In this document: piece by piece, positions 38,725 through 64,000 of the stretch
Numbering within the stretch: position 1 is the first letter of the stretch
Layout: each line of letters opens with the position of its first letter
IMG/VR virus record: IMGVR_UViG_3300031963_000004
Span: 62,001 to 126,000 of that record
Length of the DNA: 64,000 bases
Direction: 5' to 3' (one strand)
Position numbers and translations under genes: made by a program
Notes under the pieces: generated by a model
What the model saw: the letters and a program-made list of their open reading frames with translations, nothing else
What the model was told of the DNA's origin: nothing
Database searches by the model: none

Positions 38725-39891
38725 TTAATTATTTCGCCAGTACTCACTAGCAGTGGCGACACCGCTACCTGGGACGACTTTAATACCAGTATCAAGCATA
38801 GCCATTTCTGCTCCGGCTATAGCAGCCATTAAGTGTACTTCATTCATATCACCTAGATGACCTATGCGGAAAAGCTTACCTGCTACTTTACTAAGTCCTG
38901 CACCCAATGATAGGTTATAGCGTTTGTATGCTCTACTAATAACATCACTACCATTAAATCCTTCAGGTACTATAATTGCTGATACTGTGTCACTATACCA
39001 TTTTGGATCTTTGGCACATAAGTCTAGTTGCCAACCGTCAATTACTGCACGGCGAACGCCTTCTGCAAGATAGTGATGGCGTTTAACAATATTATCTAGA
39101 CCTTCTTCTTCAATCATATTAAGTGCTTCTGCAAGTCCATATAACAATGACAATGCAGGTGTATATGGAAAATAACCAGTTGCATTAGAATTAACCATAT
39201 CAGTTAAATCAAAGTAACTGCGTGATGATTTTGCAGATTTGGTTTTATCCAACGCCTTTTTACTAGCACATAATATACCTAATCCAGCAGGTAACATGAA
39301 CCCTTTTTGTGATCCTGTTACTGCCATGTCAACACCCCATTCATCAAATTTAAAATCTAATGACCCAAGTGAACTTACAGCATCAACAAATAATAATGCA
39401 GGGTGATCACATTCGTTCAGCGCCCAACGCACTTCACTAATACTTGATGTGACTCCCGTAGCAGTTTCATTGTGACATGCTAACACTGCTTTGATTTCTT
39501 GATTTTTATCGTTTGCTAATATTTCAGCAAACTTAGCGGATGGGATACCTGTACCCCACTCGCAGTCTACGATTTCTACATCTAATCCATGTTTTAAACA
39601 CATTTCTATCCAGAGATGACTGAACTGGCCAAATCGTGCAGCTAGAACTTTGTCACCGGGACTTAGTGTATTTGTTATTGCGGCTTCCCAGCATCCTGTA
39701 CCAGATGAGGGGAAAATAAAGGGTGTTCCGTGTTCTGTACGGAATACCTTCTTTAATTTTGGAAATAATTGTGCCGAAAGTTCAGGAAACTTCGGTGAGC
39801 GATGGTCTTCCATAGACACCATCATTGCTCTCATAATACGATCAGGGATGTTTGTAGGCCCAGGTACAAACAAGAAATTACGACCAGCCAT
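38725..39891 (-). CDS. sgaA: Serine-glyoxylate aminotransferase (class V, PLP-dependent)
   Basis: GRNFLFVPGPTNIPDRIMRAM, EDHRS, FGQFSHLW, HNETATGV, GSQKG (PLP Lys), FPYTP, FRIGHLG; closely tracks the SgaA sequence as I recall it. Confidence 0.88.
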   Translation of the reverse strand: MAGRNFLFVPGPTNIPDRIMRAMMVSMEDHRSPKFPELSAQLFPKLKKVFRTEHGTPFIFPSSGTGCWEAAITNTLSPGDKVLAARFGQFSHLWIEMCLKHGLDVEIVDCEWGTGIPSAKFAEILANDKNQEIKAVLACHNETATGVTSSISEVRWALNECDHPALLFVDAVSSLGSLDFKFDEWGVDMAVTGSQKGFMLPAGLGILCASKKALDKTKSAKSSRSYFDLTDMVNSNATGYFPYTPALSLLYGLAEALNMIEEEGLDNIVKRHHYLAEGVRRAVIDGWQLDLCAKDPKWYSDTVSAIIVPEGFNGSDVISRAYKRYNLSLGAGLSKVAGKLFRIGHLGDMNEVHLMAAIAGAEMAMLDTGIKVVPGSGVATASEYWRNN

Positions 39892-46524: not shown

Positions 46525-46527
46525 TAT

Positions 46528-49500: not shown

Positions 49501-50193
49501 AAATATGGATCTGGTGCAATAAGTTCTAGGTCAGGCGGCGGTACTGCTGTACCTGATAGATTGGGACCAGATGGTACTGCCGGCGGCACTAGTCAGATTG
49601 TCCTAGGAGCTACTACACTAGTTTCAGCGGGGGGAGGCGGTGCAGGACTCAGAAGCAACTTTTCAGTTAACACATCAGTAACAGGTGGAAGTGGTGGCAC
49701 AAGAAGTGCGATAACAGGTACAGCAGGTGGAAGTGGTGGTAAGGGAGGGAACGGCATTGGTGCTTCATCAGGCACAACTACAGGAATTAGCGGTGGAGAT
49801 GGCGGTGGTGGTGGTGCCGGTGGTTATAGTGGCAATGGTGGTGGAGGGGGAAATGGTAGCACATCTACAACGCAAGCCTCAGGTACAGCAGGCGCAGGCG
49901 GTGGCGGAGGAGGTGGCGCCGGTGGTAGAAATGCTACACCAAGTACAGGTGTTACGACAACTGGAGGCGGAGCTGGCGGAGGTGTTGGTGCATTAGGTAC
50001 TGGTACAAATGGCACTGCCGGGACTTCAACTACACCTAACGGCGGTGGCGGATCGGGAGGTGCTTCAGGTGGACCAAGTGGTGTTGGTGGCAACTATGGT
50101 GCAGGTGGTAACCAAGGTGGTAGAGGTGGACCAGGTTATGTAAGAATTATTTGGCCGGGAACTACAAGAACTTTCCCTAGTGCAGCAACTTAA
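46528..50193 (+). CDS. Virion adhesin/fibre with Calx-beta-like Ig repeats and Gly-rich domains (1221 aa)
   Basis: Five S(V/I)xEG/EN...F(T/N)V modules; two GGGGGG-rich domains, the second starting SWTVPAGVTSISMVCIGGGG. Confidence 0.8.
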   Translation: MARFGSTASTFGLTFSGSFTPTSTITPSASSVTENSSVTFTITSNLISKTINWRIVHSNTTNADFLNSIGSGTVTTNGSGGASLVITPINDLLFHAAPKSFTIVLSFESKDISTSSSVTIIDAATVSFSSPPSSINEGVTTTFNVTTTSLSNTTLYWSIDLSGGITAGDFSATSGPFSITSGSGSFSITTTPDMTTEGGEAFVLSIRTGSVTGTVRAQTTVSIADTSLTRTYAFGTIPTSINEGNTGIFNVNTTNIPNSPTTTLYWTIVNTSTTNLDFSATSGFFSITNNAGSFSITPTLDMTKTGVESTESFYVQIRTDSTSGPVVATSNNVNVVDMVPTYSVGPNVTSVNEGGTVTWTVTTNHVVNGTVLYWSVNLAFGMSVSDLLDNANATGSVTINDNIGTFTTTLRNDQSTEGSETLYVWLWTDSNKTQGQHVAQSINVTVTDSSTAIVPFVEVGYTIYQDVTSATFTQPAGSSSAFIIAQGGGGGGAGGYAVPNSYAASGGAGGGGSVVRALVNLPAGSTLSVFPGTGGAGSLAGSTTDGAAGAPSSLTGTGISIYAAPGGGGKNYNLRTGGDGGQSITSSASGANVIDFGIVYGSSGTSGVYTTGSFTASIDGGSSATTAGSGVYYPISGGLGGPGGVTNSSMFDAKNGTYGDGGGGGAAYKTTGSSSYGRGGNGGKGTVIVVYGNGNGFTGNQPQYTISPSATTISEGQSVVFTVNTTNVANGTVLYWDNDVNMPHPFFTTSLDHTQSGSVSISSNTASFTLSIPYDSVDDNNDRISIRLFRDSGRKYMVARASIVTIENFAQLALTQNWTSITFNQGTAVTNGRPFTPSGGSGSYWILPDSSAETALSNVGLSWDPLTGTITGTPNAGLTALTFNVLYTSSTSTASQQLSRTITVSVASVGEFTLTGSLNDVTQSWTVPAGVTSISMVCIGGGGGAGAFGLQYNTAGTLLRRYGGGAGGGGALSYRNNYSVSPGSTLTVTAGKYGSGAISSRSGGGTAVPDRLGPDGTAGGTSQIVLGATTLVSAGGGGAGLRSNFSVNTSVTGGSGGTRSAITGTAGGSGGKGGNGIGASSGTTTGISGGDGGGGGAGGYSGNGGGGGNGSTSTTQASGTAGAGGGGGGGAGGRNATPSTGVTTTGGGAGGGVGALGTGTNGTAGTSTTPNGGGGSGGASGGPSGVGGNYGAGGNQGGRGGPGYVRIIWPGTTRTFPSAAT

Positions 50194-50486: not shown

Positions 50487-50546
50487 ACTATAACTATTAA
50501 ATATTTATTGCAAATGAATATTTTTTATTTAAAGGAGACACACAGT

Positions 50547-51572
50547 ATGAAAAAGGTATTTGCATTATTAACCTTAATGGTTTCACAAGTCGCAATGTCA
50601 GCAGAATTTACTGGGGCAGGTGCGACTTTTCCATATCCGATTTACGCAAAGTGGGCAGAAGCTTATAAAGCACAAACTGGGATAGGATTGAATTATCAGA
50701 GCATTGGTAGTGGTGGCGGTATTCGTCAAATCAAAGCAAAAACAGTTGACTTTGGTGCAAGTGATATGCCATTAAAACCAGAAGAACTTGAGAAAGAAGG
50801 ACTAGTGCAATTTCCAGCTATCATAGGTGGAGTTGTTCCAGTTGTAAACTTAGATGGTATACAAGGTGGTCAACTAAAATTAACAAGTGATGTTATTGCT
50901 AACATACATTTAGGTAAAATTACTAAATGGAATGACAAAGCTATTGCCGAAATAAATCCTGGAGTTACATTACCTGCATTAAATATCACAGTCGTACATC
51001 GTGCAGATGGATCAGGTACAACATTTATTTGGACAAATTATCTAAGCAAAGCAAACGCAGACTTTCAAAAAACAGTAGGCGAGGGCACAGCAGTTAAATG
51101 GCCAGTAGGTGTAGGTGGTAAAGGTAATGAAGGTGTAGCAGCGCAAGTTCAGCGCATCAAAGGTGCTTTTGGTTATGTAGAATATGCATATGCTAAAAGA
51201 AACAAAATCGCACATACGCAATTAAAAAATCGTGATGGCAATTTTATTCAACCAGATGACAGTACATTCAAAGCAGCAACAGCTAATGCAGACTGGAATA
51301 ATGCTCCTGGCATGTACTTATTATTAACTTGGCAAACAGGCAAAGACGCATGGCCTGCAACTGGCGCAAGTTTTATTCTAATGCACAAACAACAAGCAGA
51401 TGCATTAACTGGTCGTGCTATTTTGAAATTCTTTGATTGGAGTTACAAAAATGGTAGCAAGATGAGTGAAGAATTAGAATATGTTCACTTACCACAGTCA
51501 GTTATTAAGTTGATACAAGAAAACTGGCGCCGTGACTTCAAAGGTCCAGATGGTAACGCAATTTGGAAATAA
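50547..51572 (+). CDS. pstS: Phosphate ABC transporter substrate-binding protein PstS
   Basis: Signal peptide, GAGATFPYP, GSGGG, DFGASD, RADGSGTT, GKGNEGV; AGGAG SD before ATG at 50547. Confidence 0.96.
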   Translation: MKKVFALLTLMVSQVAMSAEFTGAGATFPYPIYAKWAEAYKAQTGIGLNYQSIGSGGGIRQIKAKTVDFGASDMPLKPEELEKEGLVQFPAIIGGVVPVVNLDGIQGGQLKLTSDVIANIHLGKITKWNDKAIAEINPGVTLPALNITVVHRADGSGTTFIWTNYLSKANADFQKTVGEGTAVKWPVGVGGKGNEGVAAQVQRIKGAFGYVEYAYAKRNKIAHTQLKNRDGNFIQPDDSTFKAATANADWNNAPGMYLLLTWQTGKDAWPATGASFILMHKQQADALTGRAILKFFDWSYKNGSKMSEELEYVHLPQSVIKLIQENWRRDFKGPDGNAIWK

Positions 51573-51581
51573 GGGAAAATC

Positions 51582-52988
51582 ATGAAAAAATTTGCAAAAT
51601 TAAGTATTATATTAGCATTAGCAACTGCAATACCTGCTTTTGCTGATGAGTACAAAGAAACATTAAGTATTCTTAGAGATAAAGGCATTCTTACACAACA
51701 AGAGTATAATTCTAAACTCCAAGCATATGAAGAAAGAGAAGAAAACAAAAAGTTTGCAGAACAAAGAATCGACAAAGATGTTAGCGATAACAACAAGTGG
51801 AGACAAGCTAGAGCAAACGATGGTTCAGTTACCGAAAACGGGATCGGACTCAAAAGTAAAGATGGAAACAATACCATCCAACTTACAGGTAGACTTCATA
51901 TGGACTATCGTCAGTACGACCCCGCTTATGGTGCAGGTCAAACCACAGATTCGTATCAGAACCTAGCAGAAGTTCGTCGTGCTAGATTTGGTGTACGTGG
52001 ACAGTTCGCCAAAGACTTTAGATATCAGTTACTTGCTAACTTCGGCAATGAAGTAGGTGCCTCTGCAACTACTACAACAGCAGATGAAATGTGGGTAAAC
52101 TATGCTGCTAATCCTGAAATGCAATTTCAGTTTGGTTTGTTTAAAATGCCTTTTAGTTTAGAACAATTAACAAGCTCTAACAATATTGATTTTATGGAGC
52201 GTAGTTTAATTGGTAATACTGATGGTGAGTTTATACCAGGAAAAGAAACTGGCTTTATGTTACATGGTATTCCTAAGCCTGGTCTACTCTATCAAGTAGC
52301 ACTAAGCCGTGGTCGTGCTAACAAAGATGCATCTAATGATGGCTTTGATTACATCGGTCGTGTTGTAACAAACGTAGCCGAATTACAAGGTAGCAAAGCA
52401 TATGTATTACACTTAGGTGCAGCATATAGCACAGGCGAAGTTAAAGGTGGTGTTACACCAGCAAGCGGTAGAACAGAATCACGCAGTCAATCAGCATGGT
52501 TCACAGGTCCAGCGTTAAGTGGTACTACTACAAGAACACGCCAAGGTCTTGAAGCAGCATTTGCTTATAATGGTCTAAAGGTACAAGGTGAACAGTTCCA
52601 ATTCAATTATGATCCTACTACAGGTAACGATCAGAAAATAAATGGATACTATGTGCAAGCTTTGTATAACTTGACAGGCGAAAGTCACAACTACAAAGAT
52701 GGTATCTTTAATTGGATCAAACCTAACAACCCAACTGATAAAGGTGGTAAGGGTGCATGGCAGGTAGGTGTGCGTATCAGCGAGTTTGATGCTAGTGATA
52801 TTACTGTAGTTACTGGCAAATCAAATCGTGCTACTGCTATGACTTATGGAGTTACTTGGTTCTGTACAGATAATCTACGCTTTATGTTAAACTACGTAGA
52901 CACAAAGTTTGACAGTCTTGTAGGTAGCTCAGGTAGTCGTGTAAACGGTGACAGAGCAATCATGTTCAGGAGTCAGTTAAGCTTCTAA
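51582..52988 (+). CDS. Phosphate-selective outer-membrane porin, OprO/OprP family
   Basis: Signal peptide, coiled-coil leader, VRRARFGVRG, GLFKMPFSLEQLTSSN, FMERS, terminal QLSF; co-transcribed with pstS. Confidence 0.88.
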   Translation: MKKFAKLSIILALATAIPAFADEYKETLSILRDKGILTQQEYNSKLQAYEEREENKKFAEQRIDKDVSDNNKWRQARANDGSVTENGIGLKSKDGNNTIQLTGRLHMDYRQYDPAYGAGQTTDSYQNLAEVRRARFGVRGQFAKDFRYQLLANFGNEVGASATTTTADEMWVNYAANPEMQFQFGLFKMPFSLEQLTSSNNIDFMERSLIGNTDGEFIPGKETGFMLHGIPKPGLLYQVALSRGRANKDASNDGFDYIGRVVTNVAELQGSKAYVLHLGAAYSTGEVKGGVTPASGRTESRSQSAWFTGPALSGTTTRTRQGLEAAFAYNGLKVQGEQFQFNYDPTTGNDQKINGYYVQALYNLTGESHNYKDGIFNWIKPNNPTDKGGKGAWQVGVRISEFDASDITVVTGKSNRATAMTYGVTWFCTDNLRFMLNYVDTKFDSLVGSSGSRVNGDRAIMFRSQLSF

Positions 52989-54084: not shown

Positions 54085-54101
54085 ACTATTATTTAGTTAA
54101 A

Positions 54102-54123
54102 AATAGGGACCGAAGTCCCTATT
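54102..54123 (-). terminator. tmRNA terminator
   Basis: Minus strand aatagggac-ttcg-gtccctatt followed by a U-run. Confidence 0.85.
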
Positions 54124-54124
54124 A

Positions 54125-54433
54125 CTATTTTTGGTAACAAGGGATAGTTCCCCCGGAGATCATGCTGCTAGAGCAAAAACCTCATCGTTAGCTGCGTTTG
54201 CAGTTATAATTTTGCTTGATTTACGGTCATCGCCTACCGTGCTGTCCACTCGCCTACTCTTGACCCTGTCGAAACCATGTCTGGCCCATCAAAAGCAAGT
54301 TGGAGCTACTTATTATACCAACATTCAGGAACCGTAGCGGCCGCACAGTATCCGAAGCCATTTGCTTTTGGTGGACCAGGCGGGAGTCGAACCCGCGTCC
54401 AGAACCCTTTTGGGGTTGCTTCATACAGCAATA
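54125..54433 (-). ncRNA. ssrA: tmRNA, circularly permuted two-piece gene
   Basis: Acceptor piece ends GGACGCGGGTTCGACTCCCGCCTGGTCCACCA (3' end at 54369). An 81-nt intervening segment follows. The coding piece starts GGGCCAG at 54287; G3.U70 pair present; tag ORF 54201-54160 reads ANAANDEVFALAA-stop. Outer ends are approximate. Confidence 0.93.
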
Positions 54434-54439
54434 ACCTGT

Positions 54440-54468
54440 AGTTTATATTTATTCGGAAAGATTGTCAA
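54440..54468 (-). promoter_or_regulatory. Sigma70 promoter of ssrA (a TAAATA lies within the spacer)
   Basis: TTGACA-atctttccgaataaata-TAAACT. Confidence 0.75.
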
Positions 54469-54472
54469 CAAA

Positions 54473-54667
54473 TTAGGGTTTCTTAACTTGTTGTTCGGGC
54501 ACACAAAATGCGGTCATGTTTGGTCTATTGTGTGTGATGCTACGTGCGACTTCTAAACATTCTTCCATTCTGTCAAATGTTTTCCATTGACTTTCATGGA
54601 TATGTCCTGAGATAATAACAGCAACAATTAATACATAATTCACATATAATTCCCGGTTATATGTCAT
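54473..54667 (-). CDS. Small Cys-pair protein (family A)
   Basis: YVLIVAVII...FDRMEEC...C; start uncertain (an internal GTG is possible). Confidence 0.55.
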   Translation of the reverse strand: MTYNRELYVNYVLIVAVIISGHIHESQWKTFDRMEECLEVARSITHNRPNMTAFCVPEQQVKKP

Positions 54668-54681
54668 TATGTCGAAATAAA

Positions 54682-54819
54682 CTAATCTTCGTAATCGCTC
54701 AGTGGCTTTTCTTTACTTATCCATTCATGGTATATTAAAACACAAGCCAAACAGATACAACCGGTTAATAAAACCCCAAGCAGAAATCCAATTACAAAAT
54801 ATAATCCTTCAACTGACAT
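54682..54819 (-). CDS. 45-aa single-TM peptide (not in the ORF track)
   Basis: MSVEGLYFVIGFLLGVLLTGCICLACVLIYHEWISKEKPLSDYED; TAAATA at 54825-54830. Confidence 0.55.
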   Translation of the reverse strand: MSVEGLYFVIGFLLGVLLTGCICLACVLIYHEWISKEKPLSDYED

Positions 54820-54834
54820 ATAATTATTTATAAA

Positions 54835-57800
54835 TTACGGGTATAAATTATCGTAGTACTCTTTGATCCAAGCCCAGTCATAGGTTAATCTTAGTTTCTC
54901 AAAGTCACCCTTAACACTTTCATAATACTTGACCGCTTCGTTTGCACCCTTCAAGCAATATTCGCTGTATTCTCCGGTAGCCACGGTAAGCCAAATGTCA
55001 AGTCTTTCTTTGTTTTCTTCAGATCCTATAGTTTCTACGCTATGCTTAAGTTTGACTACTTCTCTAAAAGCAGTTCTCCAAGTATCCCATTTGCTTGTAT
55101 TAAACCGACTAATCCCTGAATTAATATTAACAACTTCGTGTTCACTGTCAAGTGTAAAGTCTAGACCCTTAACAATAGTATTAAGTGTCAACTTTTTATT
55201 GTTGGCGACAATAGCTTGGTGACCATATTCTAATCCATTTAATGGGTTAGTAGCAGTAAAGATATAATGCTTTGGTATCTGTAATCTATCTGGTTGCCAA
55301 TCAAAATTAAAATCTTCATTGACTTTAAGCTTTGCGTTCACTAAGAAATACCAAGGTGTGTTTGACATTCTAGCTGCTTCATGTTGACTAGCTACACGAC
55401 CTTTAATACCATCAACACCTACTACTATGTTAGGCAAGTCTTTTGCTATATTCAACAGATGTTCGTAGTTTTCTTCCGCGCAAGCTTCACCATTACTAAA
55501 GAAAACAATATCTAATGGTTTGCTTTGCGATAATTTTTTACTTGTGATTATATATGGATAATCGTAAATTTCTTTCTTAACAAACTTACTTGTTTCTTTG
55601 GGAGCAATGATTCTACTTGCACCTGTACTTGTGATTATAACAGTTTTATCTTCTGCTTTCCATAATGACATTGTATCAATATCTTCATGCCTCATGTTTT
55701 TATTATCTGCTGTAATAAGAACTTGATATGGAAAGTCTACTTGATTGTGAATGCTATTAACCAAAGTATCATCATCTACTATAGTAACAGGAGCAGGCAA
55801 TCTTGGAACTGATTGCTCACCTTTAAAATTTATTTCAGGGTAATCATCTAACTTTTTAATAATTGGTAAAAACATTCTTAATTCATTCACATTTACTAAG
55901 AATGTGTCACCGAACTTTTGATTATTACTAGCAAACACATACATCTGTTCGCTTGTACCTGTATCAAACGTCTGAGTAAAATCAAAATTACTATAATCAC
56001 AAATTGAACTACATATCCAAATATAATGCTCGTTCTTAGTAGGCAATGATTCTACAATAGAAAAGAACGTCTGATAGTAATCTGTGTCGTGTGGGATAAC
56101 TGTGATATTTCTGTTTGGAACTCTGTCTTTTAAAGTTTCTAAACAAGTGTGTTGATTGCCAAAATCAATTAGATAAATGTCATGCAATGATTCTTTTATC
56201 TTAGCCTCTTTGTTAACAAAGTTTAGCATAGACATATCTTCAAGTAGTTTATCTTTTTTATATTCAATAAGATATGAATCCTTATTTACAAGATAAGTGT
56301 AACCCCACTGAGTCCATTGGGTCTTAAATACGTGAAGCATTCTTGTTTGCCAAATACTAGGATAGTAGTTAAAATCAAAATCAGCATAATCAATCTCGCT
56401 ACTTAAAACCCAAAACAGTTTAGTTTTAGACTTGTTGGCACAACTAGCAATTACTTCAGCCCAGCCGTTAGCGAATCTTGTTTTCTTTATTTGAGGAAAC
56501 TTTTCTTGTAGTATTTCAAAATTTTCTAAACTATCCTTATTCATTCTATCAATATAAAACATATCTAGTTTAGAATCTACATCAATTTCTAGTTCAGAAA
56601 CATAATTATACTGTATTTTTTCTTTACAGTGTTTTTCAATAACAAAGTACGTCTGTAGGTCTAGGCTCTCTTTGTTTCCAAAAACATGCACATATGGGGA
56701 TTCATAATCTTCGGGTTCCCAACTAAAATCAAACTTGTCGTAATTTAATTCAGCGTTTAGGGCCCAAAACATTTCATCAGGATGTTGTTTAATTAAATCC
56801 TCAAGTGTAGTTTCAATATAATATTTTTTGATGTTTTTGTTAATTAATTTTACAATAGGATTAGCAACAAACTTTGTCTGCGTTGCACCTTCTATTTTAT
56901 ATTCTAACACATATTTTAAATTATCTCTATACTCATTTTTGACTCCAAATTTGTAGATATAGGGAGGGTCTCTATCATCATGATGCCAACTATAATCGAA
57001 TAAAATTTCATCAGTAGTTAACTTTGTAAATCTTGATTCATCCGGCAATTTGATTGCTGCTTGAAATGTTTGATATTTAATACCTTCATAATCAGCAACC
57101 ACATAAACAGGACCACCCGTATTTTGCCATTGTGTGCCAAACATATGTAAGTAAGGTTCGTCTTTTCTTGGTTCCCAACTGAAATCAAACTTACTTACAT
57201 CTAGACCTTTAGGCACTGCCCAAAAATTATCTTCAGGGAATTCATTTATTAAATCATCTAAATCGGTTTCAATATAATGAATTACCGTATCAGATGATTT
57301 TTTTGCTATCTGAAATGTTTGATATTTTACTCCCATATAATTAGGAACGATAAGTGCAGGTCCTGCATCTTGATTCCATTGCGTACCAAACTGATGTAAA
57401 TACGGAGGTTCTCCTATAGGAGGTTCCCAACTATAATCAAAATCTTCATCATTTAAATTTTCAGGTACTACCCAAAAAGTTTCAGTTCTATGTTCAGATA
57501 TTATTTTTTGTAACGTATTAATTTTATCTAATGTATATTTTTTAAGTGGTATTTTAGCTGCTAAAGGATAATCATGATACTTGTAACCTTTATTAGAAGG
57601 TACTACATATGCAGGTCCATCTGATGTATTAAATCTCGTACCGAATTGATGAATATAAGGAGGGTCATATCTGTTAGGTACCCACGTAAAATCAAATGAT
57701 TCTTTGTCTATATTGTTAGGTACTGCCCAAAATGCATCACTAGGATATTCGTAAATTAAATCCTCAACTGTCGTAGTATCATCTATTTCATAAATAGGAA

Positions 57801-58503
57801 CCATACACTTTCGTAATGCTTTTTGACTTTGCTGATACTTAGTACCTTGATTATTCGGTACTACATAGCAAGGTCCTCCATCAGAGTCCCATTGTGTTCC
57901 AAATACATGAACATATGGAGGTTCATGTTTATTCGGCATCCAACCAAAGTCAAAGTTTGATACATCTACGTTAACAGGCACAGCCCAAAATTCTGTATCA
58001 AAGTATAAGCTAACTAACTCTTTGAATTCTTTTTGAGAGGAAAATGTAAGGATAGGAGGAATTTTATATTTTAAGTCTATTGAAATATACTTTTGTTTTT
58101 CAGCGCCCTCTACATGATATTCTGCAACAATTTTTTCTTCTTCATCTATTGAACCAATAAAAATATACACGAAGGGTTCTTCAGTGTCATCAGGATGCCA
58201 GCTAAAGTCAAAATCTAATTTATCATTTTTAATAAAAAAGTTTTCTTTATGTTGCAAATGTCTTACTGTTTGAAAGTCATGGTACTTAACACCTTCACTT
58301 TCGGGAATTACAAACTTAGGTCCGCCAGTTTTCTGCCATTGTGTTCCAAACTGATGCGTATAAGGTCTGTCATAGTAACTAGGTCTCCATGAAAAGTCAA
58401 AGCCCTCAGTATCAACATTATCGGGGATAACCCAATAACCTTGTTCCCATAACTTAATTCTTTCTTCTATATCGTAATCTTTTTGTTCTACCATCATGAA
58501 CAC
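54835..58503 (-). CDS. 1222-aa protein with about 11 FDF(S)WxP repeats and a C-terminal glycosyltransferase-like domain
   Basis: Repeats read from the translation; the C-terminal ~230 aa are homologous to the 63173..64000 protein. Confidence 0.75.
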   Translation of the reverse strand: MFMMVEQKDYDIEERIKLWEQGYWVIPDNVDTEGFDFSWRPSYYDRPYTHQFGTQWQKTGGPKFVIPESEGVKYHDFQTVRHLQHKENFFIKNDKLDFDFSWHPDDTEEPFVYIFIGSIDEEEKIVAEYHVEGAEKQKYISIDLKYKIPPILTFSSQKEFKELVSLYFDTEFWAVPVNVDVSNFDFGWMPNKHEPPYVHVFGTQWDSDGGPCYVVPNNQGTKYQQSQKALRKCMVPIYEIDDTTTVEDLIYEYPSDAFWAVPNNIDKESFDFTWVPNRYDPPYIHQFGTRFNTSDGPAYVVPSNKGYKYHDYPLAAKIPLKKYTLDKINTLQKIISEHRTETFWVVPENLNDEDFDYSWEPPIGEPPYLHQFGTQWNQDAGPALIVPNYMGVKYQTFQIAKKSSDTVIHYIETDLDDLINEFPEDNFWAVPKGLDVSKFDFSWEPRKDEPYLHMFGTQWQNTGGPVYVVADYEGIKYQTFQAAIKLPDESRFTKLTTDEILFDYSWHHDDRDPPYIYKFGVKNEYRDNLKYVLEYKIEGATQTKFVANPIVKLINKNIKKYYIETTLEDLIKQHPDEMFWALNAELNYDKFDFSWEPEDYESPYVHVFGNKESLDLQTYFVIEKHCKEKIQYNYVSELEIDVDSKLDMFYIDRMNKDSLENFEILQEKFPQIKKTRFANGWAEVIASCANKSKTKLFWVLSSEIDYADFDFNYYPSIWQTRMLHVFKTQWTQWGYTYLVNKDSYLIEYKKDKLLEDMSMLNFVNKEAKIKESLHDIYLIDFGNQHTCLETLKDRVPNRNITVIPHDTDYYQTFFSIVESLPTKNEHYIWICSSICDYSNFDFTQTFDTGTSEQMYVFASNNQKFGDTFLVNVNELRMFLPIIKKLDDYPEINFKGEQSVPRLPAPVTIVDDDTLVNSIHNQVDFPYQVLITADNKNMRHEDIDTMSLWKAEDKTVIITSTGASRIIAPKETSKFVKKEIYDYPYIITSKKLSQSKPLDIVFFSNGEACAEENYEHLLNIAKDLPNIVVGVDGIKGRVASQHEAARMSNTPWYFLVNAKLKVNEDFNFDWQPDRLQIPKHYIFTATNPLNGLEYGHQAIVANNKKLTLNTIVKGLDFTLDSEHEVVNINSGISRFNTSKWDTWRTAFREVVKLKHSVETIGSEENKERLDIWLTVATGEYSEYCLKGANEAVKYYESVKGDFEKLRLTYDWAWIKEYYDNLYP

Positions 58504-59984
58504 ACCTTTATTTTATATTTGCTTTGAAATCTATCTGCATCTGCTCTATCATTTACCATTGGTTCACCTTTGATATTAAGTGAGGTGTTTAATAACATAG
58601 GACAACCTGTATGATAATGCCAAAATTCTAATAACTCTCTAATACCTGATCCGTCTTTAGGTACAGTCTGTACTCTACTTGTATTATCATGGTGTACGAT
58701 AGCAGGAAACTTTTCTGGATATTTACAGTTAGCAACTATTTGCATGTATCTACTATCTACCCAACATTTAGGCATATCAAAATATTCATTTGCATATTCT
58801 TCTAATATTACGGGTGCAAATGGTCTAAACTTTTGCCTACGCTTAATTTCATTTACTTTATCTTTTATTTCATTCCCTCTAGGATCAGCTAATAAACTGC
58901 GATTGCCTAATGCCCTAGGTCCAAACTCAGCACGACCTGAAGCTACACCCACTATCTTGTTTTTCTTAAGTTCATCATATAAATCTACAGTAGGATAATG
59001 CCCTTTTATGTTATGACCAAGATAAGCATTCTTCCAATTTAAATTACGCCCATAACCTAGTGCTGCTGCTCCTAAACTGCTACCTGCATCACCTGGATTA
59101 GGCATAATCCAAACTTTGTCAAAATATTTACCTAGTATTCTGTTAGCCAAACAATTTAATGCAACGCCACCACCGTATACTAAGTTATTACTATAACCTT
59201 TTTCTTTGCACAGTGTTAACGCTACTTCTAACATTTCTTCTAAAAACTTCTGCGCACTAGCTGCTATATCCATTTCATTAGCATGATGCAAGAAGCTATG
59301 GCGTTCGTCTATACCAGTATGTAAGTTTTCTTTGAATTCAAAATTGTTTTTATCGTATACAAATGATTCAAACATTTGTTCGGTGTATGTAGGGTTGCCA
59401 TAAGCAGCCATACCCATCATAATGTATTCTTCATCCATCGGATGTAAACCTACATGTTGTGTCATAGCACTGTAGAATAAGCCTAAGCTATTTGGATATT
59501 TTTTTGTATACAGATTTTTATATATAGCTTTACCATTACGGTCATAATCTGCATCCCAAATTGATATTGTGTCAAATTCTCCGATAGCATCTATTATTAA
59601 TACCGTAGCATTATTGAACGGACTTGTTTGAAAACCTGCTGCTGCATGGCTTAAATGATGATTGTGATAGTGTAACTTTTTCTTACCTAATCTTTTTTGA
59701 ACTTCTTTACCTATTAATCTTGTTTTACTAAAAACAGAGAAATCTAGTGGTTCACCTGATCGCAATGACCTTAAGAATCGTAAATAAGGTCTTTCGTAAT
59801 AATGTAAATCATGCCCTGAGGAAGAATGTTTTAGTACGTCCGTAATTAAATGAACGTTTAAGTTTGGGTCATTTTTAATTTTGCTATATCTTTCGCTGTG
59901 ACCAGCGAAAAGAATATTACCACGGTCGTCTATTAAACTGACCGCTGCATCATGAAATCCGTTGCTTATGCCTATAAAATTCAT
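58494..59984 (-). CDS. Carbamoyltransferase, NodU/CmcH family
   Basis: FHDAAV, SERYS, HHLSHAA, EFGPRALGNRSLL, FRPFAP, LNTSLN. Confidence 0.95.
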   Translation of the reverse strand: MNFIGISNGFHDAAVSLIDDRGNILFAGHSERYSKIKNDPNLNVHLITDVLKHSSSGHDLHYYERPYLRFLRSLRSGEPLDFSVFSKTRLIGKEVQKRLGKKKLHYHNHHLSHAAAGFQTSPFNNATVLIIDAIGEFDTISIWDADYDRNGKAIYKNLYTKKYPNSLGLFYSAMTQHVGLHPMDEEYIMMGMAAYGNPTYTEQMFESFVYDKNNFEFKENLHTGIDERHSFLHHANEMDIAASAQKFLEEMLEVALTLCKEKGYSNNLVYGGGVALNCLANRILGKYFDKVWIMPNPGDAGSSLGAAALGYGRNLNWKNAYLGHNIKGHYPTVDLYDELKKNKIVGVASGRAEFGPRALGNRSLLADPRGNEIKDKVNEIKRRQKFRPFAPVILEEYANEYFDMPKCWVDSRYMQIVANCKYPEKFPAIVHHDNTSRVQTVPKDGSGIRELLEFWHYHTGCPMLLNTSLNIKGEPMVNDRADADRFQSKYKIKVCS

Positions 59985-60086: not shown

Positions 60087-60902
60087 TTACCTTAGATGCT
60101 CAACTTTCCAGTCTTGATATGGCAATAACCCTGCATTGACATAATCCATATATTGTTGAATAGTGTTAACAGGTTTTAATAAATTTTTCTTAAATTTATC
60201 CATACTTATATGATCTACTTTTTTAGTTTTTACTGCTTCTACTAACATGTTAGACAAAATTTCAAGATTCGGAATACTCATATGATTATCCCTTAAATCA
60301 ATTTGTGTTTTCTTTATCCAATTATAGTAAGCAGTTTCTGGTTTATCTGAAATTAATTCTTCATTGCATATTGTAAGCAATTCAATGTTTGGTCGTAAAA
60401 AATTATCTAGTTCTTTTGCAAAAGAAACATTTACAGTGATATTACTATTCATGAGAAAGATAAACGTAACCTTAGGTAGTTTTTCTGCGATATTTCTTAC
60501 TAAATGAGTCATTGCCTCATGAGTCACAGTTTCTATATACCCATCTTGATTAGCAACAAACCATTCTAAATATTTTTTATTTTCTCTGTACCATTCATGT
60601 TTTGGTAACTTATAATCTGAGACTGGATGTAAATATACCGCTGCCGTTTCAGGTCTTTCTTTTTGAAATTCTAATTTTAATCTTCCCGGAGTACTTCTGC
60701 AAAATACAACCACATCACCGTCTACAAAACGTTCATAATCTTCAAGTAAGCATTTTAAGGCATGCTCAGTACTACCCCCAGTCATTGCTTTGTTTTTAAT
60801 TTTACATCCTAACTTAATTGCAAATCTACTGGGCCAATCTAAATTTTGTATGGGAGTAGAAGCAGAAGCAAAACTATCTCCATAAACATATACAGTATTC
60901 AT
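60087..60902 (-). CDS. SGNH/GDSL-like protein
   Basis: N-terminal VYGDSF, NKAMTGGS, late DNH. Confidence 0.65.
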   Translation of the reverse strand: MNTVYVYGDSFASASTPIQNLDWPSRFAIKLGCKIKNKAMTGGSTEHALKCLLEDYERFVDGDVVVFCRSTPGRLKLEFQKERPETAAVYLHPVSDYKLPKHEWYRENKKYLEWFVANQDGYIETVTHEAMTHLVRNIAEKLPKVTFIFLMNSNITVNVSFAKELDNFLRPNIELLTICNEELISDKPETAYYNWIKKTQIDLRDNHMSIPNLEILSNMLVEAVKTKKVDHISMDKFKKNLLKPVNTIQQYMDYVNAGLLPYQDWKVEHLR

Positions 60903-60903
60903 T

Positions 60904-61845
60904 TCAAATCCATTTACTTATATCAACATCACTAGAACAATGACAAATAGCATTTTTAGTGCAAACTACAGGCTTAGTTGGCCATATAATATCATCTGGT
61001 TTATTGATATTGCCTATAACTCCACCTACCCCGCAATTACCAAGATTAATATCGCCATTCCAATACACAAACATTGCCTTTATACCTATATCACAAGTAT
61101 AGTTGTAAAAGTTTGTCATTCCAGCATTTATGTAATCATTAGCTACTGGCATATAATGTTCTGTGCCATCATCAAAATAATATGTGTTATAATTAATTTG
61201 AGGATCTCTGATAAGTCGTTCTAGCTTTTCTTTTCTGTCTGTATACCCATTATTAGAAAAGAATTCTAATTGGTCTTTGTTATAAAGGTGCGCTTCTCTA
61301 TCTTTTCCAATCCAATCAGTTATTCTTACTGGCTCAACATTTAAACTAGGTATATCTAAAATCTTTTTATATAATTCCATTGACTGATCCCAGTATTTAG
61401 GATGCATCATTACTCTAACAGTTACATTTGTAATTTTACTACTAACTGTTACTTTTTCAATGAAGTCAGGATCAGGGAATTCAGGATGATATGAGAAACA
61501 AATGTAACTCATGTAGTATGCGATTTCTTCCCAATATCTTACAGTTCTTGCTGCGTTACTAGTCATTCCTATGCTATGATTTTTTTCATAGAGCATTTGA
61601 ACTAATTCTTTAAAGAAAGGACTTAAACTAGGTTCGCCACCTGTGATAGTTACATGAATTTTAGGATGTCTATCAAACAACATATGAAAGAATTTTTTAG
61701 CATTCTCCCATTCATAATGATGATTCTTACCCTCATGTAAATCGCTTGGGCAATAACTACACTTGTTTGTACAGATATTGTTTATTACCCAAGTTAAATG
61801 AAACGGTGCGTAATTAGGTTGTTCTATCCTTATTATCTTTTTCAT
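60904..61845 (-). CDS. Radical SAM protein
   Basis: CTNKCSYC, TGGEP, C-terminal Cys cluster (C...GNC...CTKNAICHC). Confidence 0.9.
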   Translation of the reverse strand: MKKIIRIEQPNYAPFHLTWVINNICTNKCSYCPSDLHEGKNHHYEWENAKKFFHMLFDRHPKIHVTITGGEPSLSPFFKELVQMLYEKNHSIGMTSNAARTVRYWEEIAYYMSYICFSYHPEFPDPDFIEKVTVSSKITNVTVRVMMHPKYWDQSMELYKKILDIPSLNVEPVRITDWIGKDREAHLYNKDQLEFFSNNGYTDRKEKLERLIRDPQINYNTYYFDDGTEHYMPVANDYINAGMTNFYNYTCDIGIKAMFVYWNGDINLGNCGVGGVIGNINKPDDIIWPTKPVVCTKNAICHCSSDVDISKWI

Positions 61846-63173
61846 CTATATTTTCCAGGATACATTGTACGCAAGCACTCTAGCTCAGGTATTGTATCAA
61901 ATATACTTTCATCTCTTACTTGATCCACTTGATAGCTTGTTCTTAAAAACTTAATAGCATCTTTAGGATTATGAGGCTTTTTCAACTCATGTATTATTTG
62001 TGCAAAATGAGGTCCTATATCTGTTGAATACTTTTTATCGTATTCTCCGATATAACCATTGATTCTTTCAATGATAGAATCTTTAAACTCATCTGGTAAA
62101 ATATGAACGTGATAATAACTAGGTTGTTCAAGTAGATTAATGAAGAAGTTTTTATACCAAAGCTTTTCTTTAATAACACCCAACTCTAGCAATTTATCAA
62201 TTATCTCAGGTAGTCTGAATACGTTCATAGCACCAATAGTTAATCCAGGTCTGACTATAAGATTATCCAATTTAGTCATTGCTATAAGATTTTCTTCTAC
62301 TTTAGGCCATATAGTACCGCTGCGAATTAACTCTGCTCTTGCACCTATCTCATCAATACTAGGCCAAATTTCTAACTTACCGTAATCCCATTGACTCCAG
62401 TAATCTAACACATTCTTTTTACCATATTCTAATACTGAACAGTTTGTATTATATGAAAGCTTAACGTCGAAACGTTTACCTTCAACTAACATATCAAGTA
62501 TCTGCCAATGCTCAGGCATTAACAATGGTTCACCACCTGCAAAGTAAATCTTCTCTACATGTTGAACCTGATCCTGTAAGAAATCATAGTTAGTTTGTTG
62601 ACCGACTGCATCAATATTCCAAACTTTTTCCTGATCAGTGTAGCCTAATTTCTTTGCATCAGGTACCCATGCTGAACTATATCTTGGCCCACAGCTACGA
62701 CATTTAAAATTACACAGATTACTAAATCTAAAGTCCCAATACTTTAATTTCATTTCATTACAAGTACCATCTTTTTCTGTAATGACTGGAATCTTTTTTA
62801 ATACTGATTTGAATTCACGGTTGTGATATATTCTACCACTTTCACCTGTAACTTTTTCTTTGTCGTAACACTTTCTACATATCTCAGGCTCCTCGTTGTT
62901 CATCATCTGTACACGGAGATTTTTCATATTGTCGCTGTTCCAAATCTGATCAATTGTTTGATGAGTTAGGTCGCCAGCAAAATAATTATATGTAGAAGTT
63001 AAGCAGCAAGGAACTACTTTACCGTTTGGTTCAAAGTTTAAGTGCATCCACGGGACTGCACATATTTTATTGTCTGTCTCTTTCATTAGCTTTCTGTATC
63101 TCCGTTTAGCATATTTGTACAACTGTGTGTTTAATAAAAATCTTTTAATCTTAACTTTAAGTGGAACTGACAT
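61842..63173 (-). CDS. Radical SAM protein with an N-terminal SPASM/twitch-like domain
   Basis: CAVPW...VPCC...CRKC precedes CNFKCRSC and AGGEP. Confidence 0.9.
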   Translation of the reverse strand: MSVPLKVKIKRFLLNTQLYKYAKRRYRKLMKETDNKICAVPWMHLNFEPNGKVVPCCLTSTYNYFAGDLTHQTIDQIWNSDNMKNLRVQMMNNEEPEICRKCYDKEKVTGESGRIYHNREFKSVLKKIPVITEKDGTCNEMKLKYWDFRFSNLCNFKCRSCGPRYSSAWVPDAKKLGYTDQEKVWNIDAVGQQTNYDFLQDQVQHVEKIYFAGGEPLLMPEHWQILDMLVEGKRFDVKLSYNTNCSVLEYGKKNVLDYWSQWDYGKLEIWPSIDEIGARAELIRSGTIWPKVEENLIAMTKLDNLIVRPGLTIGAMNVFRLPEIIDKLLELGVIKEKLWYKNFFINLLEQPSYYHVHILPDEFKDSIIERINGYIGEYDKKYSTDIGPHFAQIIHELKKPHNPKDAIKFLRTSYQVDQVRDESIFDTIPELECLRTMYPGKYR

Positions 63174-64000
63174 TACCAGCCTTCAATTTTCCGTATAATG
63201 TCCATTTCTCTGACTAAGGGACCTAAATTATATTTATCGGCATTATAGTGTCGTTTGAAGAACTTCGATTGTTCTGCACTTAACGCACACATAGGTAACC
63301 CTAACTTGTCAGACAATAACTCGGCTAATTGTTTAGGTTCATTATGTTCAAATGTGTCCCATAACTTTACTAGTTCATCAAAATCTTGAACTTTGTTATA
63401 GTCCCACTCAGTTAGCATAGTCAAATATGTTCCTAATCTTGCACCATAGATAGCCCATTCACCGTTCTCAACATCCATACCCACATTCTGCCATATAGTA
63501 AGATTATTAAGATTTCTACTCGCTACACTTTCTTTAAATGAACTAATACTTGGTTTATTGCCCACTACTAGGCACATCTTTACACCTTCTCTAAATCCTG
63601 CACGCCAAGCTTGAAATGGTGTATAGTTAGGATACGTGGTTGAATAACAATCATACATGCTCCAGTATATATTGTCACTACTATCTAAACAAAAATCAAC
63701 CGTCGTCGCCGCACCGCCGTCACTATTTTCGTGTGTTCGCATATTCATGACGTAAGTTTTAGTCCAACTACTCATGCCACCATTACCGTAACGTAAACCG
63801 TTAACAGCATTAATTGCTCTCCAACGATATTGTGCGATTTGATAGGTAGGGTGTTTATCAGTGAAATCTAAATCTAAATCAAAGAATGACGGATCAGGCA
63901 TATTGTCACCGTCGATTAATATAAATCTTTCTGTGTCGCTTGCCTCTGCTGCTGCTTTGTGTGCGGCATCACTTCCCTTAACTCCATCTACTCTTTTAGC
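63173..64000 (-). CDS. Glycosyltransferase-like (GT-A type) protein, partial (starts beyond the right edge)
   Basis: Frame is open to the edge: AKRVDGVKGSDAAHKAAA...FILIDGDN (DxD), NGLRYGNGG, AWRAGFREGVKM. Confidence 0.7.
   Translation of the reverse strand, partial: AKRVDGVKGSDAAHKAAAEASDTERFILIDGDNMPDPSFFDLDLDFTDKHPTYQIAQYRWRAINAVNGLRYGNGGMSSWTKTYVMNMRTHENSDGGAATTVDFCLDSSDNIYWSMYDCYSTTYPNYTPFQAWRAGFREGVKMCLVVGNKPSISSFKESVASRNLNNLTIWQNVGMDVENGEWAIYGARLGTYLTMLTEWDYNKVQDFDELVKLWDTFEHNEPKQLAELLSDKLGLPMCALSAEQSKFFKRHYNADKYNLGPLVREMDIIRKIEGW

What the first reader, a model, noticed from the sequence alone, without database searches (positions are those of the whole stretch)
54835..58503. 1222-aa protein with about 11 tandem degenerate glycosyltransferase-like modules
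The module FW(A/V)(V/L)PxNxDxxxFDFSWxPxxxxxPYxHxFGTQWxxxGGPxYVVP recurs five times nearly intact and about six times degenerate. It corresponds to the FILIDGDN...FFDLDLDF...IAQYRWRAINAVNG segment of the 63173 protein, i.e. the DxD-bearing half of a GT-A fold, but mostly without DxD. A repeated catalytically reduced half-domain fused to one full domain could act as a ruler, scaffold or multivalent sugar-binding array for processive glycan synthesis. I know no characterised protein with this architecture.
Basis: partly seen in the sequence, partly recalled or inferred. Interest (0 to 1): 0.68.

Follow-up and report, generated by a model that had tools for sequence, protein, structure and literature searches.

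The report
Phage protein with repeated half-glycosyltransferase modules
A jumbo-phage gene encodes eight small beta modules, each a leftover half of a glycosyltransferase-type (GT-A) domain, followed by three complete GT-A-like domains; this large family is known only from phages, has no annotation, and probably builds or binds a modified sugar chain.

Summary
The ORF at 54835-58503(-) carries 11 copies of the FDFSW.P-type module: 5 intact, 3 intermediate and 3 weak. The likelier start is the ATG at 58497, giving 1220 aa.

The 3 weak copies lie inside three complete GT-A-like domains, not one: D1 aa 641-774, D2 773-905, D3 995-1222 (AF2 pLDDT 89; VIA Z 9-10.7 each). The 8 N-terminal copies are all-beta modules of about 65 aa (pLDDT 92). 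They are homologous to the second half of D1 (hhalign 97%, E 1.5e-11). Their only structural matches are weak, but 15 of 19 are GT-A or nucleotidyltransferase folds.

No module has a DxD motif. D3 has an invariant Lys at the second Asp position, whereas its free-standing paralogues keep DGD.

The family has no Pfam, NCBIfam or PHROG model and is nearly confined to uncultured large phages: 214 clusters among 1.84 billion proteins, at least 384 IMG/VR contigs. Module number ranges from about 2 to about 30. The C-terminal 590 aa are constant. A carbamoyltransferase gene sits directly upstream in 50 of 62 loci, within a sugar-tailoring operon flanked by fibre genes.

Best reading: a glycosyltransferase-like enzyme with a non-catalytic array of variable length. 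The array's role as ruler, binder or spacer is untested.

The parts
54835..58497 (-). Whole gene. The likely ATG start at 58497 gives 1220 aa; the GTG at 58503 gives 1222 aa. All aa numbers in this report use the 1222-aa numbering.
   Evidence: The ATG overlaps the upstream stop codon as ATGA.
58264..58446 (-). Repeat r1 (aa 20-80), intact truncated module.
   Evidence: HMM 79.3 bits, E 1.4e-26. Modelled at pLDDT 92.
58081..58251 (-). Repeat r2 (aa 85-141), intermediate module, 63 aa after r1.
   Evidence: HMM 44.5 bits, E 1e-15. Modelled together with r1.
57817..57999 (-). Repeat r3 (aa 169-229), intact.
   Evidence: HMM 79.8 bits.
57568..57744 (-). Repeat r4 (aa 254-312), intact. Its 85-aa period includes a segment preceding the core module.
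   Evidence: HMM 72.9 bits. The D1 HMM match starts at position 49.
57301..57489 (-). Repeat r5 (aa 339-401), intact.
   Evidence: HMM 67.2 bits. The D1 HMM match starts at position 36.
57055..57237 (-). Repeat r6 (aa 423-483), intact.
   Evidence: HMM 73.0 bits.
56851..57015 (-). Repeat r7 (aa 497-551), intermediate module, 63 aa after r6.
   Evidence: HMM 44.4 bits.
56629..56787 (-). Repeat r8 (aa 573-625), intermediate module.
   Evidence: HMM 39.9 bits. D1 HMM E 7e-12.
56182..56583 (-). D1 (aa 641-774): complete short GT-A / NDP-sugar-transferase-like domain. It holds motif copy 9 (FDFNYYP at aa 709). S-S-E stands at the DxD position.
   Evidence: VIA Z up to 10.6, about 125 residues aligned, rmsd 2.6-3.0. 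AF2 pLDDT 89. Many invariant residues.
55789..56187 (-). D2 (aa 773-905): second short GT-A-like domain, a paralogue of D1. It holds motif copy 10 (aa 840). S-S-I stands at the DxD position.
   Evidence: hhalign D1-D2 98.3%, E 1.6e-14. VIA Z 9.0-9.6.
55522..55785 (-). Linker domain DX (aa 907-994): beta-rich, conserved, fold not assigned.
   Evidence: AF2 strands. No relation to the repeat (hhalign 1%).
54838..55521 (-). D3 (aa 995-1222): GT-A-like domain plus a helical tail. It holds motif copy 11 (FNFDWQP at aa 1065). N-A-K(1058) stands in place of DxD; the Lys codon is at 55330-55332.
   Evidence: VIA Z 10.7 to B4GALNT1 and 10.0 to WrtF; Z about 9 over about 220 residues to cellulose and hyaluronan synthases. 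K invariant in 100 homologues. Paralogue of the DGD-bearing 310-aa neighbour.
58494..59984 (-). NodU/CmcH-type carbamoyltransferase gene, translationally coupled to the target gene.
   Evidence: Pfam Carbam_trans_N and Carbam_trans_C, PHROG 1601. Directly upstream on the same strand in 50 of 62 IMG/VR loci.
60087..63173 (-). Three further genes of the same strand run: a 271-aa protein with a GDS-type N-terminal motif, a 313-aa radical SAM protein, and a 443-aa N-terminal-twitch radical SAM protein.
   Evidence: NF033640, 356 bits against a cut-off of 170.
63173..64000 (-). It is a DGD-bearing paralogue of D3.

Best explanation
The gene encodes a cytoplasmic, phage-made, glycosyltransferase-like multidomain protein.

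Constant part. The C-terminal 590 aa (D1-D2-linker-D3-helical tail) is three nucleotide-sugar-transferase-fold domains. Their putative nucleotide-binding strand motifs and many polar residues are invariant across the family. D3 has lost the metal-binding DxD and carries an invariant Lys (Arg in one distant member) at the second Asp position. I infer that this basic residue takes over the role of the metal at the diphosphate, so D3 would be a metal-independent transferase rather than a dead domain.

Partners. The protein is made together with an O-carbamoyltransferase (overlapping stop and start codons) and with radical-SAM and other tailoring enzymes. I infer that together they assemble a decorated glycan inside the infected cell, most likely on virion or fibre proteins.

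Variable part. The N-terminal array arose by serial duplication of the acceptor-side half of a D1-type domain. Each module has lost the nucleotide-binding half, so it cannot be catalytic. Each keeps a nearly invariant Asp/Ser/Trp/Tyr/Lys set. I infer that each module still binds something, probably sugar, so the array would act as a rigid multivalent holder or spacer of variable length for the product or acceptor.

Shown: the repeats, their homology to D1, the folds, the loss of DxD, the family's range, the variation in module number, and the conserved gene pairing.
Inferred: catalysis, the metal-independent mechanism, the target, and the role of the array.
For: Folds:
- C-terminal model pLDDT 89, pTM 0.80.
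- Foldseek hits are tandem-GT-A proteins: Mimivirus R699, LH3, K4CP, heparosan synthase 2, SunS, PBCV-1 A64R (E 5e-6 to 1e-3). In BFVD, the hits after two uncharacterised family members are mostly multi-glycosyltransferase proteins of giant viruses and phages.
- Per-domain VIA Z is 9-10.7.

Repeat origin: hhalign 97.4% to the second half of D1; D1 HMM hits; 15 of 19 exhaustive-search hits are GT-A or nucleotidyltransferase folds.

Repeat model: pLDDT 92 and pTM 0.82 for two modules, which suggests a fixed packing.

Conservation:
- 83 invariant columns in 100 C-terminal sequences, including SNGE, GR, K1058, W.PDR, DFT and WRT.FRE.
- Free-standing paralogues keep DGD, while D3 in the repeat-fused proteins has A-K, G-K or A-R.
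- In 1773 repeats, D21 is 99% conserved, W24 98%, P26 98%, F20 97%, Y49 95%, Y35 92%, Y59 92% and K58 90%.

Context:
- Carbamoyltransferase lies directly upstream in 50 of 62 loci.
- Relatives carry UDP-glucose dehydrogenase, B12-radical SAM, methyltransferase and DegT-like genes nearby.
- Fibre-like genes lie on both sides.

Module number ranges from 2 to more than 22 in representatives. Proteins are 633-2784 aa. Length follows module count (r = 0.95).
Against: - No sequence model of any glycosyltransferase family matches (Pfam, NCBIfam, PHROGs).
- No module has a DxD motif.
- D1 and D2 are only about 130 aa. They match nucleotidyltransferases (MobA, IspD, TarI, GlmU) as well as glycosyltransferases, so they could bind nucleotides without transferring sugar.
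- The structural matches of the repeats are individually weak (Z at most 3.4), and Foldseek finds nothing.
- No acceptor, donor or product is known, and no cultured phage carries the repeat protein.
- Conserved aromatic and proline residues in the repeats could be purely structural.
Confidence: 0.5

Rival explanations
1. Structural or fibre protein. The module array forms a rod of variable length that is part of the virion (whisker, fibre or decoration). The GT-A-like domains have been turned into glycan-binding (receptor-binding) heads and no longer catalyse.
For: - The gene lies between fibre-like genes: PHROG tail fibre, tail fibre assembly, and a Peptidase_G2 chaperone domain.
- Repeat number varies widely, as it does in fibres.
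- DxD is lost in every module.
- The two-module model is rigid (pTM 0.82).
Against: - The C-terminal end is the most conserved part (mean column identity 69%). Receptor-binding tips are usually the most variable part.
- There is no conserved N-terminal anchor; repeats start within 20 residues of the start.
- The monomer folds confidently without partners.
- Tight coupling to a carbamoyltransferase and to tailoring enzymes fits an enzyme better.
Confidence: 0.15
2. Pseudoenzyme regulator or scaffold. All eleven modules are non-catalytic. The protein organises the true enzymes of the operon (the DGD-bearing 310-aa paralogue, the carbamoyltransferase, the radical SAM proteins) into an assembly line, as inactive GT-A partners do in some heteromeric glycosyltransferases.
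For: - No DxD anywhere in the protein, while the neighbouring paralogue keeps DGD.
- Conserved operon and translational coupling.
- RsoM2USA keeps a D3-like protein and a 310-aa-like protein as separate genes on either side of one intervening gene.
Against: - Module number varies about 15-fold, while coupling implies about 1:1 expression with the carbamoyltransferase, so one enzyme per module is unlikely.
- D3's strict invariance extends to residues shared with the DGD paralogues: the D of DFT and the WR..FRE..K segment.
Confidence: 0.15
3. The operon modifies something other than virion protein, either phage DNA (a hypermodified base carrying sugar or carbamoyl groups) or a host envelope glycan. 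In this reading the array binds the polymer (DNA or polysaccharide).
For: - Radical SAM, carbamoyltransferase and aminotransferase-type genes also occur in nucleic-acid and envelope modification pathways (own knowledge).
- The 313-aa radical SAM protein has a weak best hit to QueE (E 2e-9, far below the cut-off).
Against: - No hydroxymethylase, DpdA/TGT-like gene or other DNA-modification marker was seen in the annotated part of the window.
- The protein has no obvious membrane segment or signal peptide by eye, which argues against an envelope-facing role.
- The fold matches are to sugar transferases acting on proteins and glycans.
Confidence: 0.1

Closest known systems
Tandem GT-A polymerases and multi-GT proteins: E. 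coli K4 chondroitin polymerase (2Z86), Pasteurella heparosan synthase 2 (8VH7), LARGE1 (7UI6)
   Same: Several GT-A-fold domains on one chain. These are among the best Foldseek matches of the C-terminal module.
   Different: Those have two catalytic domains, each with DxD (own knowledge), and no array of truncated modules. There is no detectable sequence similarity.
Mimivirus R699 and human LH3 (9DYT, 6FXK): a GT-A domain next to a non-catalytic GT-A-like accessory domain
   Same: R699 is the top Foldseek hit (E 5e-6). It is a virus-encoded GT-A next to a degenerate GT-A-like domain without DxD (own knowledge), and it glycosylates a repetitive viral or structural protein.
   Different: They have one accessory domain of full size, not 2 to about 30 half-domains. 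LH3 also carries a C-terminal dioxygenase domain, which is absent here.
Metal-independent GT-A enzymes such as GT14 C2GnT-L
   Same: DxD is absent. In C2GnT-L basic residues take the place of the metal at the diphosphate (own knowledge). D3 has an invariant Lys exactly at the second Asp position.
   Different: No homology has been shown, and the mechanism in D3 is only inferred.
RsoM2USA gp348 and gp350, and the window's own 310-aa protein
   Same: They are true sequence homologues of D3 (tblastn 5e-18 for gp348; hhalign 98.4% for the 310-aa family; gp350 is aligned with D3). They sit in a similar layout: an unnamed 473-aa gene lies between gp348 and gp350, as the 443-aa radical SAM gene adjoins the 310-aa gene here.
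   Different: They are free-standing single domains that keep DGD and have no repeats. All are annotated as hypothetical.
Chain-length rulers of glycan synthesis (WbdD coiled coil with WbdA in E. coli O9a)
   Same: The idea is the same: a rigid element of variable length attached to a glycosyltransferase could set product length (own knowledge).
   Different: The ruler there is a coiled coil on a separate protein. Here the element would be a string of beta modules derived from the enzyme's own fold. No evidence of ruler function was obtained.

Membership tests
GT-A / nucleotide-diphospho-sugar transferase fold superfamily | Rossmann-like alpha/beta/alpha domain with a central mixed sheet | tested here: met
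   D1, D2 and D3 each align 124-143 residues at rmsd 2.5-3.5 and Z 9-10.7 to GT-A glycosyltransferases and nucleotidyltransferases. Foldseek probability is 0.9-1.0.
GT-A / nucleotide-diphospho-sugar transferase fold superfamily | Complete domain, including the N-terminal nucleotide-binding half, in the eight N-terminal repeats | tested here: not met
   The repeats are 55-63 aa and all-beta. They match only HMM positions about 36/58 to 100/127 of D1. Structural matches are Z 2-3.4 over 58-68 residues.
GT-A glycosyltransferases (metal-dependent) | DxD motif at the end of the strand after helix 2 | tested here: not met
   The position reads S-S-E in D1, S-S-I in D2 and N-A-K in D3, and P-E/D-N in the repeats. 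The 310-aa neighbour and RsoM2USA gp348 and gp350 have D-G-D.
GT-A glycosyltransferases | Transfer of sugar from a nucleotide sugar | not testable with these tools
   Needs a biochemical assay.
Pfam Glycos_transf_2 (GT2) and other curated GT families | Match to the family HMM above the gathering score | tested here: not met
   No Pfam family at E <= 0.01 for the whole protein, nor at E <= 0.1 for aa 900-1222. No NCBIfam or PHROG family. Language-model similarity to GT2 and GT92 clusters is only 0.84-0.86, a lead at most.
Phage tail fibre / structural repeat proteins | Match to fibre families, or virion association | tested here: inconclusive
   No PHROG or Pfam fibre family matches. Fibre-like genes flank the operon. 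No proteomics exists for any carrier.
Known carbohydrate-binding module or lectin folds | Structural match of the repeat to a CBM or lectin | tested here: not met
   No such chain appears among the Foldseek or exhaustive VIA matches.

The most novel reading that the evidence does not exclude
The array is a new kind of molecular ruler or multivalent acceptor clamp built from recycled acceptor-side halves of the enzyme's own GT-A fold. Each ~65-aa module would keep a sugar- or acceptor-binding pocket (the D21/S23/W24/Y35/Y49/K58/Y59 set). The number of modules, which phages vary from about 2 to about 30, would then set the length or spacing of a carbamoylated glycan laid down on virion fibres by a metal-independent, Lys-for-DxD transferase.
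Probability: 0.15. Interest if true: 0.85.

Novelty: new variant of a known kind. Interest (0 to 1): 0.6.

Why it matters
This would be a clear example of a catalytic fold cut in half and multiplied into a long array next to its intact parents, with intermediate forms (65-, 85- and about 120-aa modules) still present in relatives.

The family is abundant in environmental large phages. More than 2000 clusters at 90% identity appeared in one length-limited search, yet no database has a model for it.

It also marks a conserved sugar-tailoring operon (carbamoyltransferase, radical SAM enzymes, several GT-A-like proteins) in jumbo phages. That points to phage-encoded glycosylation comparable to what is known from giant viruses and chloroviruses.

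The Lys-for-DxD replacement, found only in the repeat-fused copies, gives a sharp and testable mechanistic question.

Tried and rejected
- Pfam, PHROGs and NCBIfam on the whole protein and on the C-terminus: no family. Sub-threshold Pfam hits in relatives (Whi5, DUF4185, LAG1) are spurious short matches.
- Profile searches of PDB sequences with the C-terminal and repeat alignments: nothing meaningful.
- Megablast against cultured phages: no match. tblastn finds only RsoM2USA, and only for D3.
- Foldseek of the repeat model against PDB: no match below E = 5.
- ESM Atlas feature search of the repeat half: scores of 0.85 only, and all hits are viral hypothetical proteins.
- Atlas structural search: finds the family itself, then a MobA-like cluster at TM 0.33.
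- Direct profile comparison of the repeat with the 310-aa protein family: no signal.
- D1 against D3: weak (4%, E 0.01), though collinear.
- Tandem Repeats Finder: no DNA-level repeat.
- Complex prediction of the carbamoyltransferase with D3: returned no verdict (score 0.00). It counts neither for nor against binding.
- Literature: no paper links jumbo phages, glycosyltransferases and carbamoyltransferases in this sense. The RsoM2USA paper identified only the ten most abundant virion bands and does not mention gp348 or gp350.
- PDB sequence searches for the 267-aa and 266-aa neighbours: no hit.
- I considered the repeats as substrates of the neighbouring radical SAM/SPASM-type enzyme (RiPP-like). 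I set this aside because the modules are well-folded domains.
Full report
**Setting.** The window is bases 62001-126000 of a 223-kb IMG/VR virus record. It carries a T4-type large terminase, a UvsW-like helicase and a DnaB-like helicase. The terminase is 49.5% identical to those of PA5oct-like Pseudomonas jumbo phages. The element is therefore a large, uncultured tailed phage. A near-identical copy of the locus sits on a second IMG/VR contig (L009).

**The observation.** The ORF 54835..58503(-) is open for 1222 codons from a GTG.
- The ATG two codons further in (58497) overlaps the TGA of the upstream carbamoyltransferase gene as ATGA and follows an AAGGTG.
- The ESM Atlas holds the protein from that Met, and the closest homologue is 1220 aa. 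I take 58497 as the start.
- A simple regex finds 11 motif copies.
- A 66-position HMM built from repeats of other family members hits all eleven places: five at 67-80 bits, three at 40-45 bits and three weakly (E 2e-8, 4e-4, 7e-5).
- The copies are 33-58% identical at protein level and leave no DNA-level repeat.

**Anatomy.** The C-terminal 593 aa fold with high confidence (pLDDT 89, pTM 0.80).
- Foldseek returns proteins with several GT-A domains: Mimivirus R699, LH3, K4 chondroitin polymerase, heparosan synthase 2, SunS and PBCV-1 A64R (E 5e-6 to 1e-3). In BFVD the hits after the family's own members are mostly multi-glycosyltransferase proteins of giant viruses and phages.
- VIA-align resolves three separate domains: aa 640-774 (D1), 773-904 (D2) and 995-1135 (D3, followed by a helical tail). 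Each aligns about 125-140 residues at rmsd about 3 and Z 9-10.7 to GT-A glycosyltransferases and sugar nucleotidyltransferases.
- A beta-rich linker domain (aa 907-994) is not assigned.
- The three weakest motif copies lie inside D1, D2 and D3, at the same place in each: just after the strand that would carry DxD.
- So the protein has three complete domains, not one.

**The eight N-terminal modules.** A two-module model (aa 16-146) is all-beta, with pLDDT 92 and pTM 0.82.
- The order of elements is short strand (FW.VP), long loop with FDFSW.P, strand (PY.H.FG), strand (YVVP), long strand. This repeats the order seen in the second half of D1.
- Profile-profile comparison gives 97.4% (E 1.5e-11, 58 columns) against D1, 81% against D2, 75% against D3, and 1% against the linker domain, which serves as a control.
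- The D1 HMM hits six of the eight modules directly, always with its second half. In the four modules with an 85-aa period the match begins earlier, at HMM positions 36-49. From the model's secondary structure I read that stretch as the helix before the strand.
- Foldseek finds no structural match for the modules.
- The exhaustive VIA search of 48,161 chains gives only 19 chains at Z >= 2, with a maximum of 3.4. By my count 15 of these are GT-A or nucleotidyltransferase folds: CesA, Chs1, B4GALNT1, ColGalT1, STIV A197, FKRP, R699, LARGE1, HAS, SpsA, IspD, MurU, a glucose-1-phosphate cytidylyltransferase and two UDP-glucose pyrophosphorylases.
- Each hit alone is weak. The enrichment, together with the sequence evidence, shows that the module is the acceptor-side half of a D1-type domain that has lost the nucleotide-binding half.

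**DxD and conservation.** No module has DxD.
- By alignment, D1 reads S-S-E, D2 reads S-S-I and D3 reads N-A-K at that position.
- D3 is a paralogue of the neighbouring 310-aa protein (BLASTP 2e-10; hhalign 98.4%). That protein has D-G-D.
- RsoM2USA gp348 (a free-standing D3-like protein) and gp350 also have D-G-D. D3 of four repeat-fused proteins has A-K, A-K, G-K and A-R.
- The Lys is invariant in 100 C-terminal sequences, alongside 82 other invariant columns. Residues shared by both paralogue groups are retained in D3.
- A basic residue at the second Asp position, with the rest of the site kept, suggests to me a metal-independent transferase rather than a dead domain. This is an inference.
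- In 1773 repeat instances, D21 (99%), W24 and P26 (98%), F20 (97%), Y49 (95%), Y35 and Y59 (92%) and K58 (90%) are nearly fixed, although the repeats average about 35% identity.
- Fixed polar residues in a non-catalytic module suggest a retained binding site, but a purely structural role is not excluded.

**The family.**
- The word search found more than 2000 relatives of 1217-2132 aa, all unnamed.
- The exhaustive profile search with the two-module alignment found only 214 clusters (50% identity) among 1.84 billion proteins. The module is therefore confined to this family.
- Architectures run from two modules plus D2-linker-D3 (587 aa) to 22 or more modules (2248 aa). Some relatives carry arrays of longer truncated modules, with an 85-120 aa period matching D1/D2 HMM positions about 40-127.
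- In IMG/VR at least 384 contigs, up to 364 kb long, carry the gene. Products range from 633 to 2784 aa.
- Module count follows protein length (r = 0.95), and the C-terminal 590 aa are collinear in nearly all relatives.
- Among 185,579 species genomes only two MAG contigs carry it. Among cultured phages, only RsoM2USA matches, and only with the single D3-like domain.
- Close orthologues keep module-by-module correspondence. Distant ones keep it only for the first and last modules, which points to turnover inside the array.

**Context.** The target is the last gene of a same-strand run with overlapping or closely spaced genes.
- In order: 266-aa, 267-aa and 100-aa proteins, the 310-aa DGD protein, the N-terminal-twitch radical SAM protein (NF033640), a 313-aa radical SAM protein, a 271-aa protein with a GDS-type start, the carbamoyltransferase, and the target.
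- The carbamoyltransferase lies directly upstream on the same strand in 50 of 62 loci that have enough sequence, mostly 12 bases away.
- Relatives add UDP-glucose dehydrogenase, B12-radical SAM, methyltransferase and DegT-like genes.
- Fibre-like genes flank the run on both sides.
- By eye the protein has no signal peptide or membrane segment.

**Interpretation.** The most likely reading is a glycosyltransferase-like enzyme that works with tailoring enzymes on a decorated glycan inside the infected cell. Virion or fibre proteins are the most plausible target. The array is a non-catalytic element of variable length. Whether it binds sugar, holds the acceptor, spaces the enzyme from an anchor or measures chain length cannot be decided here. 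The rivals are a structural fibre, a pseudoenzyme scaffold, and a role in DNA or envelope modification; each is listed with odds. A complex prediction of the carbamoyltransferase with D3 returned no verdict and is not used.

**Novelty.** The fold superfamily is known, and tandem GT-A proteins and GT-A-like accessory domains are known. An array of 2 to about 30 half-domains derived from the enzyme's own fold, fused to three DxD-less GT-A-like domains, is not covered by any model in the three libraries searched (Pfam, NCBIfam, PHROGs) and was not found in the papers I searched. I rate it a new variant of a known kind.

Noticed in passing
window 54100-54482 (-): A phage-encoded two-piece (permuted) tmRNA of the betaproteobacterial type lies just downstream of the target gene. 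Rfam beta_tmRNA scores 134.6 bits and tmRNA_permuted 134.9 bits. ARAGORN gives the tag peptide ANAANDEVFALAA. It may hint at a betaproteobacterial host.
   Followed up: partly
window 50508-52988 (+): Two host-like phosphate-uptake genes sit side by side: a PstS-type phosphate-binding protein (PHROG 5385) and a phosphate-selective porin O/P (Pfam E 1.7e-54). In the flanks of 80 related loci, tblastn found the porin in 1 and pstS in 12.
   Followed up: partly
window 40024-50193 (+): Two very large ORFs (2166 aa and 1221 aa) lie on the opposite strand. The first has a weak tail-fibre PHROG hit. The second has a Gly_rich_2 domain and matches PHROG 4474. They are probably fibre proteins inserted between the operon and the MoxR/DUF2201 pair that follows the gene in relatives.
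   Followed up: partly
L002:2375-3975 (-), i.e. just beyond the window end: Two adjacent paralogue-sized proteins (267 aa and 266 aa) have N-termini that resemble the first strand of GT8-like enzymes. Neither has a Pfam or PDB match. They may be further glycosyltransferases of the operon.
   Followed up: partly
window 60087-60902 (-): A 271-aa protein begins with VYVYGDSFAS, a GDSL/SGNH-hydrolase-type motif, but matches no family model. It was found near only 1 of 80 related loci.
   Followed up: no
window 38725-39891 (-): A class-V aminotransferase scores 590 bits against the BhcA (L-aspartate-glyoxylate aminotransferase) model, just under its cut-off of 650. This is an unusual auxiliary metabolic gene for a phage.
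   Followed up: no
window 54682-54819 (-): A 45-aa ORF with a hydrophobic, membrane-like segment follows the target gene's stop directly. It is not known whether it is a real gene.
   Followed up: no
L004 and L006 (relatives), about 2-6 kb downstream of the homologous gene: Large ART-PolyVal proteins (951 aa and 1252 aa) follow the gene in related 330-350 kb phages. They are not present at this position in the window.
   Followed up: no
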